Source: Salisapilia sapeloensis CBS 127946 (Eukaryota > Protista > Oomycota). Taken from it: 58,174 nt of DNA. Position 1 is the first letter of the stretch; each line of letters begins with the position of its first letter. Below the pieces are notes generated by a model. That model searched no databases. It was not told the DNA's origin and saw only the letters and a list, made by a program, of their open reading frames with translations. Shown one piece after another: positions 1 through 11,946 of this stretch. The translations under genes were made by a program, and so were the position numbers. The stretch lies in NCBI GenBank assembly GCA_023334545.1, contig JAADVB010000107.1, positions 1 to 58,174 of the forward strand. The letters are read 5' to 3'.

Positions 1-141
1 AACCTTTCCCCAGAGGAAATCCAGCGGGAAGCCCAACAGCTCGCCAACGACACCAAGATCGTTCGCGAGATGCTTCTCGATCTCCTCCGACAGTCTGCCT
101 CCCCTCGTTCGATGGACACAGAGGTGCGATATGAAAGATAA
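1..141 (+). CDS. 3' end of an upstream gene (partial, unknown product)
   Basis: Frame 1 is open from base 1 (NLSPEEIQREAQQLANDTKIVREMLLDLLRQ...) to TAA at 139-141 and is followed by AT-rich sequence. No family recognised. Confidence 0.4.
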   Translation, partial: NLSPEEIQREAQQLANDTKIVREMLLDLLRQSASPRSMDTEVRYER

Positions 142-581
142 TGAGTATGAGAACAGTATTTTCTATGGGAATATATGTTATTGAAGTGATCGTGAAGGCT
201 ACGACGATCTTAGGTAGATACTTTCTTTGCTAAATGAAACGTCGGAATGTAGTGAAGAACGGCTCGAACATCTCAAATAGAAGTACGTGGGCGTTTCGTC
301 GAACCCCTCCCGATCTAGTTTATTTCCACCAAGGATCTGTTTGGTCTCAATTATCGACCTTCCAGTGGCACTTCTTGTCCAGAGTTGGAACTTCCCAATA
401 CAAGCTCGCATTGCTTAGCCCATTTACGAGATGAAGTACCAGTTGGAAAAGTATACTCATCACCCTTCTCGGAAATGGACGATAAGGAACTGATGACTAC
501 TGCGTCGCGTGAGGAAAAGGACAGTGGCGCGACAAACTTCTCGCGTATTCACCAGCATCCATGCCAAGCTGCCCGGTATCC

Positions 582-640: not shown

Positions 641-3091
641 ATGCCGAATCTTCTCTTCTTCACACTGGCCACCGGTCTAGTCTTGACCAACTTTACGACC
701 TGGGCGACACTCTACGATGGTGGCTGGAGTCAGTTTGGCTGGCATGCTCAACACAGCTCGAATAAGAACGGTGGATGGGGCGAAAACGTCTTTGGTTGGG
801 GAGACGGAGGTGATGTTGCAGCTATCAATCAACGTGCATCGGACATTGTGCTGGGCTACACGGATGCTCAAGTGCTCGGCCAAATGACCCAAATTGATAT
901 TGGACAAGTGATGACTCCTGATAAGCAACTGGATGAAGACAAGATGCGAGAGTTTGCGAGAAAGCATGTCGGCTCGTACCTGAACACACCATGGACGGAG
1001 CCTATTGACGGCAAGTATGGATGGACCTCGGAAGAGTGGCGCGCGATCATTGCTCAAATGCAACTAATCACGTTGGAGGAGAATCCTGGTCAACCGTTAG
1101 TCTTCGGGATAGATTCTGTCCACGGAGCCAACTACGTGACGGATGCTGTTCTTTTCCCACAGCAGATTAACTTCGGTGCGACCTTCAATGCCGATCTCGT
1201 GTATCAAGCCTCCAAGTTTGCTGCATCTGACACTGCAGCCTCCGGTATGCACTGGATCTTTGGACCGATCGCTGACATCCAGCAGAATCCGCTGTGGGCT
1301 CGTACCTACGAGACATTCAGCGAAGACACGTACTTGACATCTGTGCTCATTGACGCCGCCGTGAGTGGTTTCCAAGAGAACAATGCCACTGCTGCTTGCT
1401 TGAAACACTTCATCGGGTACTCAGGCACGTCAACGGGTAACGATCGAACGGATGTGTCGCTCTCGAACTTTGACCTCCTCAACTACTTCATGCCACCATT
1501 TAAGGCGGGGATGGATGCAGGAACCTACACAGTCATGGAGTCGTACAGTTCGCTTAATGGAGTCCCTGTGGTCACGAGTACGAAGATTCTACGCGACTTG
1601 ATTCGTAAAGACCTGGACTACGATGGTGTGGTCGTCACGGACTGGCAAGAGATTGAAAACCTGCACTTGTACCACAAAGTTGCGTCGAGTGAGACGGAAG
1701 CTGTTCGCATGGCACTGACCCGAACGACGCTTGATATGAGCATGGTCCCGTACTCGACCGCGTTCATCGAGCAAGGAGAAGAGCTGCTAGCGGCATACCC
1801 ACAGTACATCGAAAGACTGCGAACGTCAGCACGTCGCATTGTCAAGATGAAGTTGATGCTTGGGCTGTACGATGAATCGGTCGCATCCAATGAAGACGAG
1901 AGCTACTCAGTCGGTAATCAGGAATCACAAGATGTCGCTTTGCAAGCTGCTCGCGAGTCGATCGTGCTGCTTCAGAACAACGACAGCAGTCTTCCCATCC
2001 CGGATGGATCCACTGTCTTCTTAACTGGACCAAACGCAGACGACATTGGTCGACAGTGCGGCGGTTGGACGTTGCGCTGGCAAGGGTACTCTGGTAACGA
2101 CATGTTTAGTCATGGGCAGTCGATCTACAGAGCCATGAAATCCATGGGAGACGACCGAATGGCCGTGTCGTACTTCAATGGCTTGCCCATCGACGGGTCC
2201 TACTCGGATGCGAACATGTCGACGGCTAAAGCATTGGCGGATGTGAACGAGTACACCGTTGTCGTTATTGGCGAAGATACCTACACGGAGAAGCCTGGCG
2301 ATATTCCCGACTTAGCTCTGCCTGGTGGACAGATCGAATATGTGAAGGAACTCGCATCTACCGGCACAAAGGTCATTGCCGTTTTCCTCGGTGGACGCCC
2401 TCGACTGCTGAACGGTCTAACCGAGTACGTCCATGCGTTCATCTATGGAATGCTACCGTGTGAATTTGGCGGTCAAGCCATCGCGGAGATTCTCGCCGGT
2501 GACGTCAACCCGAGTGGTAAGCTACCTCTGACTTACCCGAAAGACCCTGCGAACGTTGGCGTCAAGTACAACCACCTTGTCAACTTGAAGTGCAAGGATG
2601 AATACTGCGAGCCTCAATGGAAGTTTGGAGCAGGTCTCAGCTACACGACCTTTACTTATTCTCCGCTGCGCTTGAGCCATACCGAGGTGAGCTCCAATGA
2701 CGACAAGGTCATTGCAGAAGTGACGGTCACGAATTCGGGAGACAATGATGGGTATGAAACAGTCATGCTCTTCCTCACACAGACCTATCGGTCCATCTCG
2801 GTGCCTGAAGTGAAGATGCTGAAGAAGTTCACGAAGATTTTCCTCAAGGCTGGCGAGTCGGAAGTGGTAGAGTTCGAGCTCACGAAGAACGATTGGAGCG
2901 TGTATGATCCTCAGATTGGTGACGGACTAAAGACGACTGCCGAGGACGGACAGTTTGTCGTGAGCGTGCAGGCTGAAACGGATTGCGACGTCTACGGATT
3001 CATTGTCGATGAACGATGCGCAACATTCACGCTTCGTCGAGGCGAGCCCCCATTTCCGATTGAAGCGGAAGATCCTACGGTGACCTACTAA
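641..3091 (+). CDS. Secreted glycoside hydrolase family 3 beta-glucosidase
   Basis: Intronless 816-aa ORF with an N-terminal signal peptide. GH3 motifs FGIDSVHG, ACLKHFIGY and VVVTDW (nucleophile Asp), a C-terminal GH3 domain (VVVIGEDTYTEKPGD, GKLPLTYP) and an Fn3-like tail (ETVMLFL...LKKFTKIFL). Confidence 0.93.
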   Translation: MPNLLFFTLATGLVLTNFTTWATLYDGGWSQFGWHAQHSSNKNGGWGENVFGWGDGGDVAAINQRASDIVLGYTDAQVLGQMTQIDIGQVMTPDKQLDEDKMREFARKHVGSYLNTPWTEPIDGKYGWTSEEWRAIIAQMQLITLEENPGQPLVFGIDSVHGANYVTDAVLFPQQINFGATFNADLVYQASKFAASDTAASGMHWIFGPIADIQQNPLWARTYETFSEDTYLTSVLIDAAVSGFQENNATAACLKHFIGYSGTSTGNDRTDVSLSNFDLLNYFMPPFKAGMDAGTYTVMESYSSLNGVPVVTSTKILRDLIRKDLDYDGVVVTDWQEIENLHLYHKVASSETEAVRMALTRTTLDMSMVPYSTAFIEQGEELLAAYPQYIERLRTSARRIVKMKLMLGLYDESVASNEDESYSVGNQESQDVALQAARESIVLLQNNDSSLPIPDGSTVFLTGPNADDIGRQCGGWTLRWQGYSGNDMFSHGQSIYRAMKSMGDDRMAVSYFNGLPIDGSYSDANMSTAKALADVNEYTVVVIGEDTYTEKPGDIPDLALPGGQIEYVKELASTGTKVIAVFLGGRPRLLNGLTEYVHAFIYGMLPCEFGGQAIAEILAGDVNPSGKLPLTYPKDPANVGVKYNHLVNLKCKDEYCEPQWKFGAGLSYTTFTYSPLRLSHTEVSSNDDKVIAEVTVTNSGDNDGYETVMLFLTQTYRSISVPEVKMLKKFTKIFLKAGESEVVEFELTKNDWSVYDPQIGDGLKTTAEDGQFVVSVQAETDCDVYGFIVDERCATFTLRRGEPPFPIEAEDPTVTY

Positions 3092-8285: not shown

Positions 8286-9886
8286 TTAATTCATGTTGCC
8301 CATGCACATGAACTTGGTCTCCATGTACTCTTCTAGCCCCATGAACGAGCCTTCGCGACCAAGCCCAGACTCCTTCACTCCTCCGAACGGCGCCTGCGCA
8401 TTCGACAAGAGACCAGTGTTGATGCCAATCATACCGACCTCGAGGGCCCTCGACACACGCCACACGCGCTGGTGGTCGCGCGTGTAAAAGTATCCTGCTA
8501 GACCGACGTCCGTCGAGTTGGCCATCGCCAGCGCCTCCTCCTCCGTCTTAAACGTGAAGATCGGGACCACAGGTCCAAAGATCTCTTCACTCCACACCCG
8601 CATGCTCTCGTTCACGCCTGACAGAACCGTCGGCTCGTAGTAGTTGTCTCCATACGCACTCGACTTGCCTCCCGTCAAGGCCTTGGCACCCTTCTCCAGC
8701 GCATCCGACACGATACCAGACGTCTTCTCAAAGGCCTGCGTGTTGATCAACGGACCGATCTGCGTGCCTTCCTGCAGCGGATGGCCGATACCCAGCTCAT
8801 TCACCTTGGCCACTACCTTTTGCGTCACTTCCTCCGCAATGGACTCGTGGAGGAAGATGCGGTTGCTGCAAACGCACGTCTGACCAGTGTTGCGGAACTT
8901 GGACGCCATTAGACCATCCACAGCTGCATCAATGTCAGCGTCTTCGAACACGATGAAGGGAGCGTTGCCGCCCAGTTCAAAGGAGACGCGCTTGACGTTA
9001 GAAGCAGCCTGCTGCATCAACAGCTTTCCAACTCGAGTGGAGCCTGTAAAAGATATCTTACGGACGTCTTTGCTCGTCGTCAGAGCTTCTCCCACTTCCG
9101 CTGCCTTGTCGTGCGTGGCAGTCACAAAGTTAAGTACACCGGACGGGATCCCCACGTCTTCCGCTAACTTGGCGAGAGCGAGGGCGGATAGCGGAGTAGA
9201 AGCATCGGGTTTTACCACGGCCGTGCAGCCGGCAGCAAGACAAGGACCGAGTTTGCGCGTGATCATGGCCAGAGGGAAATTGAACGGCGTGATGATGCCC
9301 GTGACACCCACTGGTTCTTTCACAGCGACCATCTCCTGACCTGATTGAGACGGAGGGATAACAAAGCCAGACGAGTGGAGGACTTCGTGGGCGTAGTAGT
9401 CGATGAAACTCGCGGCGTACGCGACTTCCCCTTTCGCTTCGGCCAAGGGCTTGCCACACTCCACCGACGCGATAGTGCCCAAGTCATCTGTGTTGGCAAC
9501 AATGGCGGCGTACCATTTTTTCAAGAGCTCTCCCCGAGCTTTCGGTGCCACCGTCTTCCAGCTCTCAAAGGCTTTGGCAGCCTTCTGGATCGCGTCCTTA
9601 GTCTCTTTTTCCCCCATATTGGGCACTTGCGCTAGCTCCATCCCATTCGCTGGGTCTGTATACACGAGTCAGTTTCTCCAGGTCCATTCATACTAATACA
9701 AGAAACGTATATACCAGTAACAGGGAAGGATTCGGGGGCACCGACCCATTGTCCCCCGATAAAGCTCTTGCTGCAGAGCAGACTCGGGTCATTCAGAAGC
9801 GACGGTAAAGAGTATGTGTGCATGGCTGATCTAGGCGCTGACAAGGTCAGGTTTTTCGTGGCACTCGCTCTCGCAGCACGTAGCAT
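8286..9886 (-). CDS. ALDH5A1: Succinate-semialdehyde dehydrogenase, mitochondrial (ALDH family)
   Basis: ALDH motifs ITPFNFP, SFTGSTRVGK, ELGGNAPFIVF, catalytic GQTCVC and EEIFGPV. Arg/Ser/Ala-rich transit peptide MLRAARASATKNLTLSAPRSA. One 59-nt intron at 9656-9714 (phase 1, rejoining as VTDPANG). Confidence 0.92.
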
Positions 9887-9931
9887 GGAGTTGGCACTGC
9901 TCTTGTTCGAGGCAAATGGCGATTTGGTTCC

Positions 9932-10370
9932 CTAGAGATCGAATTCCTGTGAGACGATGCACATTGAAGGTAGAGGCGTAACGTACTGTCAAAGGTTGCA
10001 GATATGACACATCCGGATCCGGGACGACGGGGTCTGCCGGGCCGAGAACAGACCGCTGACTTCCTTCACGGAGATAGCTGCAGATACGGCTCGTGCTCAC
10101 GGGTAAGTCGAGCTCTTCACGAAGCTGATGGGCCGATTTGTTACCTGTGCTTGCAGCGTACCGTAGCCGAAGGATGTCCTCGGGGGATAGTTTACGAGGT
10201 CGACCTGTAGGCTTTTTCGTTCCGTACGTATCTGGGTCTTTCAAAAACTTTTGGATCACTGATCGAGAGCGACCGACGCGTGCGGCGATGACTGTTTTAC
10301 CAATGCCTTCGGATGACAGCTCGAGAATGTGAGCCCGCTCTTCTTCCGTAAGTGACTTTCCATGACCCAT
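9932..10370 (-). mobile_element. Tc1/Tc3-type transposase DNA-binding (double HTH) coding segment with no DDE domain; possibly domesticated
   Basis: MGHGKSLTEEERAHILELSSEGIGKTVIAARVGRSRSVIQKFL...GRPRKLS...SAHQLREELDLPVSTSRICSYL matches the paired-like HTH1, the GRPR AT-hook-like linker and HTH2 of Tc3 transposases. No catalytic domain or TIRs seen. Confidence 0.8.
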
Positions 10371-11946
10371 TTCACCATCCAGGGGGTTTAAAAGATCTTC
10401 GAAGGTGGAGACGGAGTCAGGAAGCGAAAAGTTGGTTTGGCGACACTGGATTCAATTTTGAGTCCGGTCGATCTAAAATCGAAACAAGAGCTGAATACTT
10501 GACCGTCAACTTCCTCATCACATGCATATGGTGTATGGTACATAACAAGCAACAAGAAGTACATCAGAAGACTAATAGAGCTACTGTCTTACCGATCCAC
10601 GCAGTGGGTTTATCCTTTTGCACCGTGTGCTTACTTTTTCGCAATTTCGTGGTTGCAAACAGCTTAGTTCGAGTCATACAAATTTGTAGATAAACTAAGA
10701 TTTGCCTCTTTGTACCATCTGCGGAGGACAATGGGAGCAGCTCTGCTGCCCGATGTGCGTGCAAGCAAAGCTGCAGCAAGAGTTGCATCTGATGGATGAC
10801 ACTTTGGATCTGTTGTACGAATGATTGAAAGATAGGTACACTTTGTAGGAATTCCAGGCTTTGACTATGACAGATCACATCTACCTTTCTGTGCTACACG
10901 GGAAAGCGGACCATTTCATCGTTTTAGATCGTTTTCTTAAACAAAACCAGTGCAAAGAAAGTCAGCGTTTTCATGGAAATACACTATGCTGCTTCATGTG
11001 CTTGTCGTCTTTACACAAGGATATCTTGTTAAGTTGTACTTCGATTGAAGACTGTGTTTTTCCAGAGTATGAACGGTGAAAACGTATTTCTCGCTATAAA
11101 GCACATGCAAAGACAGTATAATCTAGCAGAGTGCTGCAATGCGATTTTAATCCTTTCTCTTCATTGATTGATCCAGTTAGATGAAACTTGAGAAGCTTTT
11201 TCTTCGAATACCCTTATTTATCTCGCGAATTGATTTCATTTCCACCATCTTTTAATCTCTTTTATTCTTCGGTATAATTTAATACTTTCTATCTTGAGCT
11301 TTTAACTTCATGTTTCCGAGACAATCGACCAAGTAGTGAGACCCAGTCGCCAGCTTGTACGTCGAATACTTACCACCACGTTTCGCTCACCATCGAGTAT
11401 GGCTGTCCATCGCTACCCATCTCTGTAGATAATTGAAACCTATATTTCAACAGTCAGAATTCTACGGTGAGAACTTCGGTCTTATCACATTCAATTCTAC
11501 AGCCAACAGAGTATCTGTAGTACGACATGAAAGCTTAGAACTGTACAAAGTGTTTCCACAAACTGAGAGAACGTATAAAAGTAGAGCAAGTCTTCATGTG
11601 ATTGTTTTGTCTGTGGCGCTAAAGTGGGGTATTGAACGAGAAGACTTGACATCGGCATCATTACAAGTACATACACAGACACTAACCAACTATGGCCGTA
11701 TTGTTGTATGTCATTGATGAATGCGAATTTCTTTGAGACATTTTACCCAGAACAAGGTAGAGCAGATTCGCGCCCAAACATGTTTTTATGAAGCTGTTTT
11801 TCGTCTAAGACACGATTCGAATACTAAGCCGTGACAAAACTCGGCAAAGTGCTGGCAGTTGAAATCCAAAGATGAAGAGCGCATAATATAACACTAGCAA
11901 TTTCAAGCTAAGAATAAACTATTCACCCTGAAATCAGCACAAAAGA

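What the first reader, a model, noticed from the sequence alone, without database searches (positions are those of the whole stretch)
8286..10370. Tc3-transposase HTH exon can splice in frame onto SSADH; tandem 3' splice sites give HTH-only or HTH-SSADH fusion
Seen: the HTH exon (10370-9987, 128 codons) ends at a GT donor (9986). There are two AG acceptors 15 nt apart. The proximal one (9947, 40-nt intron) gives ...PLTEFDL*, a 132-aa HTH-only protein. The distal one (9932, 55-nt intron, typical size here, CTCAC branch site ~17 nt upstream) gives ...PLT-GTKSPFASNKSSANS-MLRAARAS, exactly in frame with SSADH ATG 9886. The only stop between the two frames is the TAG that itself forms the distal acceptor. 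Inference: transposase-domain capture (SETMAR-like) could yield a DNA-binding, possibly nuclear SSADH isoform with a buried transit peptide, alongside mitochondrial SSADH from ATG 9886.
Basis: partly seen in the sequence, partly recalled or inferred. Interest (0 to 1): 0.78.

Follow-up and report, generated by a model that had tools for sequence, protein, structure and literature searches.

The report
Transposon DNA-binding exon joined to SSADH
In this water mould, the DNA-gripping head of an old jumping-gene enzyme sits just upstream of a normal metabolic enzyme gene (SSADH); three other oomycete lineages keep the same pairing, so it is probably a real, very old gene fusion, but no RNA data could be checked.

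Summary
The 128-codon ORF is the complete two-part DNA-binding domain of a Tc3-type transposase. It has no catalytic domain, no terminal repeats and no second copy in the window. It is not a species-specific relic. The closest relatives among 1.84 billion proteins lie directly upstream of SSADH, on the same strand, in two unnamed oomycete assemblies and in both Nothophytophthora sp. Chile5 copies. GenBank already models one Nothophytophthora copy as an HTH-Aldedh fusion. In all four lineages, the last consensus donor in the HTH ORF and the first AG after the last SSADH-frame stop join in frame. In Nothophytophthora, SSADH exon 1 has no ATG, so only the HTH exon can supply a start codon. The HTH has decayed or is absent at this locus in five other oomycetes.

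My reading (about 0.6) is an ancient host-transposase fusion. The HTH exon would be an alternative first exon giving HTH-SSADH, while mitochondrial SSADH is made from ATG 9886. The proposed tandem-acceptor switch is weak.

Earlier notes of this scan record other HTH-enzyme fusions in this genome, but not this one.

The parts
9987..10370 (-). HTH exon: 128 codons from ATG 10370 to the last base before the donor
   Evidence: Orthologous exons with the same M-G-x-G start lie upstream of SSADH in L006, L007, L008 and L009.
10062..10370 (-). Two-part Tc3-type DNA-binding domain (aa 1-103): two three-helix subdomains joined by a TGRPRKL basic linker
   Evidence: Pfam HTH_Tnp_Tc3_1. The A1 profile hits Tc3 transposase DBD 1u78 residues 1-103 at E=1e-21. 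The AlphaFold model has six helices with pLDDT 83-93, and Foldseek's top hit is 1u78.
9987..10061 (-). Pro/Asp-rich tail (aa 104-128), predicted disordered, with no transposase homology. It begins with the motif YLxxxxxRS(S/V)(L/I), which only the SSADH-linked orthologues share.
   Evidence: pLDDT is below 50 for residues 106-128. Alignment A1. The motif was found in only 3 of the 150 best hits, all SSADH-linked.
9932..9986 (-). Candidate 55-nt intron: donor GTACGT (9986-9981), branch-like CTCAC (9953-9949), acceptor TAG (9934-9932)
   Evidence: The equivalent in-frame introns are 339 nt (L006), 271 nt (L007), 75 nt (L008) and 76 nt (L009).
9947..9948 (-). Proximal AG, which would give a 40-nt intron and the ending EFDL*. 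It lies 3 nt from the only branch-like A.
9887..9931 (-). 15-codon stop-free linker (GTKSPFASNKSSANS) in frame with the SSADH ATG. It is 5' UTR if transcription starts downstream of the HTH exon.
9715..9886 (-). SSADH exon 1: ATG 9886, an Arg/Ser/Ala-rich N-terminus with no acidic residue (presequence-like), then the start of the ALDH fold
   Evidence: The N-terminal length matches annotated oomycete SSADHs.
9656..9714 (-). SSADH intron, 59 nt (GTATAT...CTGAC...ACAG), at a position shared with relatives
8286..9655 (-). SSADH exon 2 including the stop codon. The catalytic motifs ELGGNAP and GQTCVCSNR are intact.
   Evidence: Aldedh E=2.8e-163. TIGR01780 SSADH scores 628 bits. Identity to oomycete SSADHs is 61-71%.
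10376..10378 (-). Out-of-frame ATG 8 nt upstream of the HTH ATG. It opens a 40-codon overlapping ORF and has T at -3; the HTH ATG has G at -3 and G at +4.

Best explanation
An ancestor of a broad group of oomycetes acquired the DNA-binding head of a Tc3-type transposase just upstream of the SSADH gene. The catalytic domain and the terminal repeats were lost. The head has since been kept as a protein-coding exon physically tied to SSADH.

In the window it most likely serves as an alternative first coding exon. Transcripts that start upstream of 10370 would splice 9986 to 9932. They would encode a protein of about 656 aa: the two-part HTH, a disordered linker, and the whole, catalytically intact SSADH. 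The presequence would then be internal, so this form should not enter mitochondria as the ordinary form does.

Transcripts that start downstream of the HTH exon would give ordinary mitochondrial SSADH from ATG 9886.

Shown: the domain's identity, its conservation, its linkage to SSADH, and frame compatibility.

Inferred: the splice itself, the two start sites, the localisation, and any regulatory role of a DNA-bound GABA-shunt enzyme.
For: 1. Identity. The ORF is a complete Tc3-type DNA-binding domain and nothing more.

2. Linkage. Among 1.84 billion representatives, the two best hits (P0121, P0122) and the fourth (P0124) each lie immediately upstream of SSADH on the same strand. The loci are L006, L007 and L008, and a second Nothophytophthora copy is L009. 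The window shares neither flanking gene of those loci, so only the HTH-SSADH pair has stayed together.

3. Single origin. The five SSADH-linked HTHs form one group in a tree of 82 relatives (SH-aLRT 77; 0 of 500 label shuffles as clustered). They also share a tail motif absent from transposases.

4. Selection.
- The ORF is intact at 42-45% aa identity to the window across lineages whose SSADH is only 61-71% identical. Relics in L005 and L003 show what decay looks like.
- Between L008 and L009, the HTH exon is the best-conserved segment: 95.1% identity and no indels, against 90.7% upstream. Intron 1 carries a 1-nt indel.
- dN/dS is 0.27 for the domain and 0.34 for the SSADH body.

5. Fusion.
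- In four independent lineages, the last consensus donor of the HTH ORF and the first AG after the last SSADH-frame stop are in frame. Each has a yUnAy motif 15-32 nt upstream. By chance this is about (1/3)^4 = 0.012.
- In L008 and L009, the SSADH exon-1 frame has no Met, yet its ALDH part is conserved.
- In L006, codon-position GC bias stops at the donor and resumes about 140 nt before the SSADH ATG, at the predicted acceptor. The 44-codon linker has GC3 0.82, against about 0.6 in the intron.
- GenBank RLN79082.1 is modelled as HTH+Aldedh.
Against: - There is no RNA evidence.
- SSADH keeps its own ATG and presequence in the window, L006 and L007, so it does not need the HTH exon there.
- The HTH has decayed in L005 and L003. 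It is absent at the same syntenic locus in L004, Lagenidium giganteum and Phytophthora ramorum. It is therefore dispensable in many lineages.
- The candidate introns of L006 and L007 (339 and 271 nt) are long next to the verified SSADH introns (59-115 nt) and could hold a promoter.
- The donor/acceptor rule behind the 0.012 figure was chosen after looking at the data.
- The window HTH has GC3 0.51, against 0.69-0.80 for neighbouring genes.
- An out-of-frame ATG lies 8 nt upstream of the HTH ATG.
- The GenBank fusion is a prediction, and it skips the SSADH N-terminal exons.
Confidence: 0.6

Rival explanations
1. Two separate genes. A small domesticated HTH-only protein (132-179 aa in the window) is encoded just upstream of an independent mitochondrial SSADH gene. 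The in-frame splice options are coincidence, and the adjacency is inherited tight synteny.
For: - In every lineage the HTH ORF reaches a stop soon after the donor if the intron is kept: 130-191 aa.
- SSADH has its own ATG and presequence in three of four lineages.
- HTH-only Tc3-type proteins exist in oomycetes, for example Achlya hypogyna OQR96880.1 at 147 aa. Unchecked notes of this scan list several solo Tc1/mariner DNA-binding domains in this genome.
- The gaps of 271-339 nt in L006 and L007 could hold a promoter.
Against: - In the window, only 46-100 nt separate the end of the HTH from ATG 9886. The SSADH promoter and the HTH 3' end would have to overlap.
- L008 and L009 have no ATG for a conserved SSADH exon 1.
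- All four lineages are frame-compatible.
- The linker upstream of the L006 SSADH ATG has a coding-like composition.
- The pair stays together while both flanks change.
Confidence: 0.27
2. The HTH ORF is translated only as a regulatory upstream ORF, or is simply a 5' leader of SSADH mRNA. Its peptide has no function of its own.
For: The ORF lies in the SSADH 5' region. An out-of-frame ATG at 10378 suggests a cluttered leader.
Against: Conservation is at the protein level: the fold and 19 invariant residues are kept across lineages and relatives, dN/dS is 0.27, and GC3 is host-like at 0.88 in L006. A uORF that mattered only for its position would not preserve a two-part DNA-binding fold.
Confidence: 0.07
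3. A neutral, decaying fragment of a Tc1/mariner insertion in the SSADH promoter, whose ORF is still open by chance.
For: There is no DDE domain and no terminal repeats. GC3 is lower than in host genes. Such relics do exist at this locus in L005 and L003.
Against: Orthologous intact copies occur in four lineages at 42-45% aa identity to the window, with aligned start codons. The copies are monophyletic. The exon is more conserved than its flanks and has no indels.
Confidence: 0.03
4. One reading: two acceptors 15 nt apart (9947 and 9932) act as a switch between an HTH-only protein and the fusion.
For: Both AGs exist. The proximal one gives EFDL*.
Against: - The only yUnAy motif in the intron has its A 3 nt from the proximal AG.
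- The orthologous introns hold several AGs upstream of the in-frame one with no conserved pattern.
Confidence: 0.12

Closest known systems
Host-transposase fusion genes formed by transposase capture through alternative splicing (Cosby et al., bioRxiv 10.1101/2020.05.07.082677)
   Same: A transposase DNA-binding domain, stripped of its element, is joined by splicing to a host gene. The original host isoform can persist beside the fusion.
   Different: Those cases are in tetrapods and mostly join the DNA-binding domain to regulatory domains such as KRAB. Here the partner is an intact metabolic enzyme, the DNA-binding domain is the 5' exon, the host is an oomycete, and the splice has not been seen in RNA.
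SETMAR (Metnase), a SET domain fused to an Hsmar1 mariner transposase (PMC2847698, listed; its DNA-binding domain 7s03 is a weak fold match)
   Same: A Tc1/mariner-superfamily DNA-binding domain has been recruited into a host protein.
   Different: SETMAR keeps the whole transposase at the C-terminus of a chromatin enzyme and is restricted to primates. Here only the DNA-binding domain is kept, it is N-terminal, and the arrangement spans several oomycete lineages.
GenBank RLN79082.1, hypothetical protein BBJ28_00006961 of Nothophytophthora sp. Chile5 (P0124)
   Same: It is the orthologous locus and is already modelled as HTH_Tnp_Tc3_1 + Aldedh.
   Different: The automatic model skips the SSADH N-terminal exons. 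It is unnamed, and the one three-term paper search run here found no paper on it. In that species SSADH exon 1 has no ATG of its own, unlike in the window.
Bacterial PutA, a DNA-binding domain fused to proline dehydrogenase and an ALDH-superfamily P5C dehydrogenase (from my own knowledge; not tested here)
   Same: It works alike in principle: an N-terminal DNA-binding domain sits on an active enzyme of the ALDH superfamily, so the enzyme can double as a regulator.
   Different: The DNA-binding fold is unrelated (ribbon-helix-helix), the organism is a bacterium, there is no transposase origin, and no splicing is involved.
Oomycete HTH + enzyme-like-domain proteins noted earlier in this genome (s1-303213, s1-282301)
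   Same: They occur in the same genome and have the same architecture: a transposase- or CENP-B-type HTH spliced to an enzyme fold.
   Different: Those enzyme folds are reported as catalytically dead. Here the SSADH motifs are intact and the gene also encodes the ordinary enzyme. I did not check those notes.

Membership tests
Tc1/mariner (Tc3/IS630-type) transposase or transposon | Two-part HTH DNA-binding domain at the N-terminus | tested here: met
   Pfam PF11427 E=8.8e-9. The profile hits 1u78 residues 1-103 at E=1e-21. Model and Foldseek. 43% identity to residues 1-92 of a complete 331-aa transposase in L001.
Tc1/mariner (Tc3/IS630-type) transposase or transposon | DDE_3 catalytic domain | tested here: not met
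   tblastn with the L001 transposase finds only residues 1-92 anywhere in the 58-kb window. No DDE family was hit in Pfam.
Tc1/mariner (Tc3/IS630-type) transposase or transposon | Terminal inverted repeats, and other copies | tested here: not met
   No inverted repeat flanks the ORF. There is no second copy in the window by tblastn or blastn.
Succinate-semialdehyde dehydrogenase (ALDH5 / GabD, TIGR01780) | Full-length Aldedh domain and best match to the SSADH subfamily | tested here: met
   PF00171 E=2.8e-163, covering profile positions 12-460 of 461. TIGR01780 is the best NCBIfam hit at 628 bits with exon 2 alone; the whole-protein cutoff is 646. The nearest proteins are annotated oomycete SSADHs, and the gene nests among them in the tree.
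Succinate-semialdehyde dehydrogenase (ALDH5 / GabD, TIGR01780) | Catalytic Glu and Cys motifs | tested here: met
   ELGGNAP and GQTCVCSNR were read in the translation. Assigning these as the catalytic motifs rests on general knowledge of ALDHs.
Host-transposase fusion gene | Transposase-derived domain kept under purifying selection across species | tested here: met
   Intact orthologues in four lineages. One clade. dN/dS 0.27 between L008 and L009, with no indels in the exon.
Host-transposase fusion gene | Transposase and host parts joined in one mature mRNA or protein | not testable with these tools
There is indirect support only: frame compatibility in four lineages, no ATG in L008/L009 SSADH exon 1, and a coding-like L006 linker.
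SETMAR-like fusion | Complete transposase (DNA-binding domain plus catalytic core) fused C-terminal to the host domain | tested here: not met
   Only the DNA-binding domain is present, and it lies 5' of the host gene.

The most novel reading that the evidence does not exclude
HTH-SSADH would be a eukaryotic 'trigger enzyme': a catalytically active GABA-shunt dehydrogenase that also binds specific DNA through a transposase-derived domain. It would couple succinate-semialdehyde or NAD(P)H state to transcription. One gene would supply both this form and the mitochondrial enzyme through alternative first exons. In Nothophytophthora the two roles would have been split after duplication, with one copy losing its own start codon.
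Probability: 0.22. Interest if true: 0.8.

Novelty: new variant of a known kind. Interest (0 to 1): 0.62.

Why it matters
Transposase capture is known as a source of new transcription factors in vertebrates. Here the same process seems to have joined a DNA-binding domain to a working enzyme of central metabolism in oomycetes, a group that includes major plant and animal pathogens.

The arrangement has been kept across lineages that diverged deeply, and lost in others. That gives a natural set of presence, decay and absence cases, and one species where the fusion looks obligatory. With these, one can ask what a DNA-bound SSADH does.

It also corrects public gene models. RLN79082.1, and the paralogue model P0025 (the GenBank protein at the second Nothophytophthora copy, L009), appear to mis-join or truncate the SSADH N-terminus.

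Tried and rejected
- Exact look-ups of window proteins found no public gene call for this genome.
- The word-index search with the HTH found nothing among proteins of 70-224 aa. The same search with P0124 residues 1-130 found only P0124 itself.
- The phage collection gave no match.
- A metagenome scan gave only a complete Tc1-like element (L001) and a weak fragment (L002).
- The first comparison with the nearest SSADH loci (L003-L005) found no HTH and seemed to favour a species-specific relic. The exhaustive HMMER search overturned this.
- Framing alone was rejected as evidence, because 22-29% of GT-AG pairs in the window are open and in frame.
- GC3 of the region upstream of the SSADH ATG is only moderate evidence. 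L005, whose HTH is dead, also has a 46-codon open stretch there with GC3 0.74.
- A paper search for SSADH + oomycete + transposase returned nothing.
Exons were searched separately by reference, and joins were made only inside scripts to test reading frames.
Full report
**Observation**

On the minus strand, an ORF starts at ATG 10370 and runs 128 codons to 9987. It is followed by ACA|GTACGT, with the GT at 9986-9985. AG dinucleotides lie at 9948-9947 and 9933-9932.

- Splicing to the proximal AG gives ...PLT-EFDL* (132 aa).
- Splicing to the distal AG gives ...PLT/GTKSPFASNKSSANS/MLRAARAS, in frame with ATG 9886.
- The TAG at 9934-9932 is the last stop in the SSADH frame.
- Left unspliced, the ORF runs to a stop at 9831 (179 aa).

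Pfam calls the ORF HTH_Tnp_Tc3_1 (E=8.8e-9) and the downstream gene Aldedh (E=2.8e-163). NCBIfam's best family for the downstream gene is TIGR01780 SSADH.

SSADH itself is exon 1 9886-9715, a 59-nt intron 9714-9656 and exon 2 9655-8286, giving 513 aa. Its N-terminal length and Arg/Ser/Ala-rich start match annotated oomycete SSADHs, and the ELGGNAP and GQTCVCSNR motifs are intact.

Framing by itself is weak evidence, because 16 of 72 or 60 of 210 GT-AG pairs in this stretch give an open in-frame join.

**What the HTH is**

- A profile of the ORF and its relatives hits the two-part DNA-binding domain of Tc3 transposase (1u78, residues 1-103, E=1e-21).
- An AlphaFold model shows two three-helix subdomains (pLDDT 83-93) and a disordered tail from residue 106. 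Foldseek's top match is 1u78, followed by paired domains.
- A complete Tc1-like element from a metagenome (L001) has a 331-aa transposase with HTH and DDE_3 domains. It aligns start codon to start codon with residues 1-92 at 43% identity.
- Nothing of a DDE domain exists anywhere in the window. No inverted repeats flank the ORF, and there is no second copy.

It is therefore a DNA-binding domain alone, not a transposon.

**The turn in the evidence**

The word-index search found no short relatives. The nearest SSADH loci first fetched (L003-L005) showed no HTH. At that point a species-specific relic looked likely.

The exhaustive HMMER search changed this (803 hits, best identity 50%).

- The two best hits, P0121 and P0122, come from Logan assemblies SRR15309572 and SRR15309551. 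Each lies directly upstream of an Aldedh gene on the same strand (L006, L007).
- The fourth hit, P0124, is GenBank RLN79082.1 of Nothophytophthora sp. Chile5. It is a 490-aa model carrying both HTH_Tnp_Tc3_1 and Aldedh.
- A second Nothophytophthora contig (L009) carries the same arrangement at 88.9% nucleotide identity.
- These loci share flanking genes: a flavodoxin/FAD-binding reductase upstream and an LRR_FBXL15/WW gene downstream. The window has neither next to the pair. Only HTH-SSADH has stayed together.

**One origin, kept by selection**

- The five SSADH-linked HTHs form a single group in a tree with 77 relatives (SH-aLRT 77; none of 500 label shuffles as clustered).
- Beyond the transposase homology they share the tail motif YLxxxxxRS(S/V)(L/I). 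It occurs in no other of the 150 best hits.
- They are 42-45% identical to the window HTH in alignment A1, while SSADH is 61-71% identical. Neutral DNA would not keep an ORF at that distance.
- What decay looks like can be seen at the same locus. L005 has a frame-shifted relic that still begins MG..LS.SER.Q (combined E=7e-4). L003 has a fainter one.
- L004, Lagenidium giganteum (L010) and Phytophthora ramorum (L011, L012) have none.
- Between the two Nothophytophthora copies, the HTH exon is 95.1% identical with no indel. The upstream region is 90.7% identical with six gap columns, and the first intron is 93.4% identical with a 1-nt indel.
- dN/dS is 0.27 for the domain, with few sites, and 0.34 for the SSADH body.
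- In GC-rich L006, the HTH exon has host-like GC3 (0.88, against 0.94 for SSADH).

**Is it spliced to SSADH?**

The indirect evidence is as follows.

1. I took, in each lineage, the last consensus donor in the HTH ORF and the first AG after the last stop of the SSADH frame.

| Locus | Donor | First AG after last SSADH-frame stop |
|---|---|---|
| Window | ACA\|GTACGT | 9932 |
| L006 | CAG\|GTATGT | 6788 |
| L007 | GCG\|GTACGT | 6820 |
| L008 | TCG\|GTAAGA | 6464 |

   All four joins are in frame, and each has a yUnAy motif 15-32 nt upstream. By chance this is about (1/3)^4 = 0.012. I chose the rule after seeing the data.

2. In L008 and L009 the SSADH exon-1 frame has no Met at all. Its ALDH part is nevertheless conserved between the copies (PELVCTKG..KWVDALNQQHFPVI). 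Only 75-76 nt separate it from the HTH exon. The HTH exon is the only visible source of a start codon. The GenBank model of L009 starts instead at an ATG inside an intron and truncates the fold.

3. In L006 the codon-position GC pattern disappears at the donor. It returns about 140 nt before the SSADH ATG, at the predicted acceptor. The 44-codon linker there has GC3 0.82 against about 0.6 in the intron, and it contains an acidic run and NKRRRV. This point is tempered by L005, which also has an open, mildly biased stretch upstream of its ATG.

4. In the window only 46-100 nt separate the end of the HTH from ATG 9886, which leaves little room for two independent transcription units.

Several points count against the fusion.

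- SSADH keeps its own ATG and presequence in three lineages.
- The HTH was lost repeatedly.
- The introns of L006 and L007 would be 339 and 271 nt.
- The window HTH has GC3 0.51, against 0.69-0.80 in neighbouring genes.
- An out-of-frame ATG sits 8 nt upstream of the HTH ATG.

**Evolutionary reading (inference)**

The SSADH tree follows a species-like order, with HTH-linked copies scattered through it. That fits an ancestral capture followed by several losses.

Nothophytophthora has further SSADH paralogues (P0028, and a tandem SSADH-like hit at the end of L008). This may have allowed the HTH-linked copy to lose its own start codon.

**The tandem-acceptor idea**

The 55-nt intron holds a single yUnAy motif, CTCAC. 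Its A is 18 nt from the distal acceptor and only 3 nt from the proximal AG. I rate this sub-claim low. Intron retention, which gives 130-191-aa HTH-only products in every lineage, is the likelier source of an HTH-only protein.

**Comparison with known systems**

The mechanism matches host-transposase fusion by alternative splicing, described for tetrapods (10.1101/2020.05.07.082677), and more loosely SETMAR. It differs in three ways: the partner is an intact metabolic enzyme, the DNA-binding domain is the 5' exon, and the host is an oomycete.

From my own knowledge, the nearest functional analogue is bacterial PutA, a DNA-binding domain on an ALDH-superfamily enzyme.

Earlier notes of this scan report HTH fusions to dead enzyme folds elsewhere in this genome (s1-303213, s1-282301) and several solo Tc1/mariner DNA-binding domains. 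I did not check those notes. They raise the prior for this architecture, and none covers this locus. A full-text search for SSADH, oomycete and transposase found no paper.

**Limits**

- The identity of the window's species and of the five Logan samples is unknown.
Exons were searched by reference, and joins were made only in scripts to test frames.

**Verdict**

| Claim | Estimate |
|---|---|
| Observation | confirmed |
| Domesticated Tc3-type DNA-binding exon conserved in cis with SSADH | about 0.9 |
| Spliced in frame to SSADH as an alternative first exon in the window | about 0.6 |
| Tandem-acceptor switch | about 0.12 |

Noticed in passing
L008:6001-8169 and L009:5346-7511: The public gene models at the two Nothophytophthora sp. 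Chile5 copies look wrong at the 5' side. RLN79082.1 jumps from the HTH exon into the middle of SSADH and skips about 100 conserved N-terminal residues. The paralogue model (P0025) starts at an ATG inside an intron.
   Followed up: partly
L008 versus L009 (4.7 kb): Nothophytophthora sp. Chile5 carries two copies of the whole locus at 88.9% nucleotide identity on different contigs. This suggests diverged haplotypes, a hybrid genome or a segmental duplication.
   Followed up: partly
L005:4774-5029 and L003:187-348: Frame-shifted relics of the same HTH exon lie upstream of SSADH in two other oomycete assemblies. They show independent decay of the exon.
   Followed up: yes
L001:1-1714: A metagenome contig (Ga0307414_10176353) is a complete Tc1-like element. 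It has a 331-aa HTH+DDE_3 transposase flanked by long inverted repeats; the ORFs at 9-197 (minus) and 1371-1619 (plus) mirror each other.
   Followed up: partly
window:10400-11946: The 1.5 kb upstream of the HTH exon is AT-richer (GC 0.39-0.44). It has no long ORF, no match to the transposase and no repeat pairing with the HTH region. Any upstream promoter of the HTH exon would have to lie here.
   Followed up: partly
P0029 (Phytophthora ramorum KRP22_004446, 591 aa): A second oomycete SSADH paralogue is modelled with an N-terminal signal-peptide-like extension of about 100 aa that is unrelated to the HTH. It may be another fusion or a mis-merged model.
   Followed up: no
window:7876-8187: A dynein light chain gene (PF01221, E=3e-20) lies on the same strand and starts only about 100 nt after the SSADH stop. 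This shows how tightly genes are packed here.
   Followed up: no
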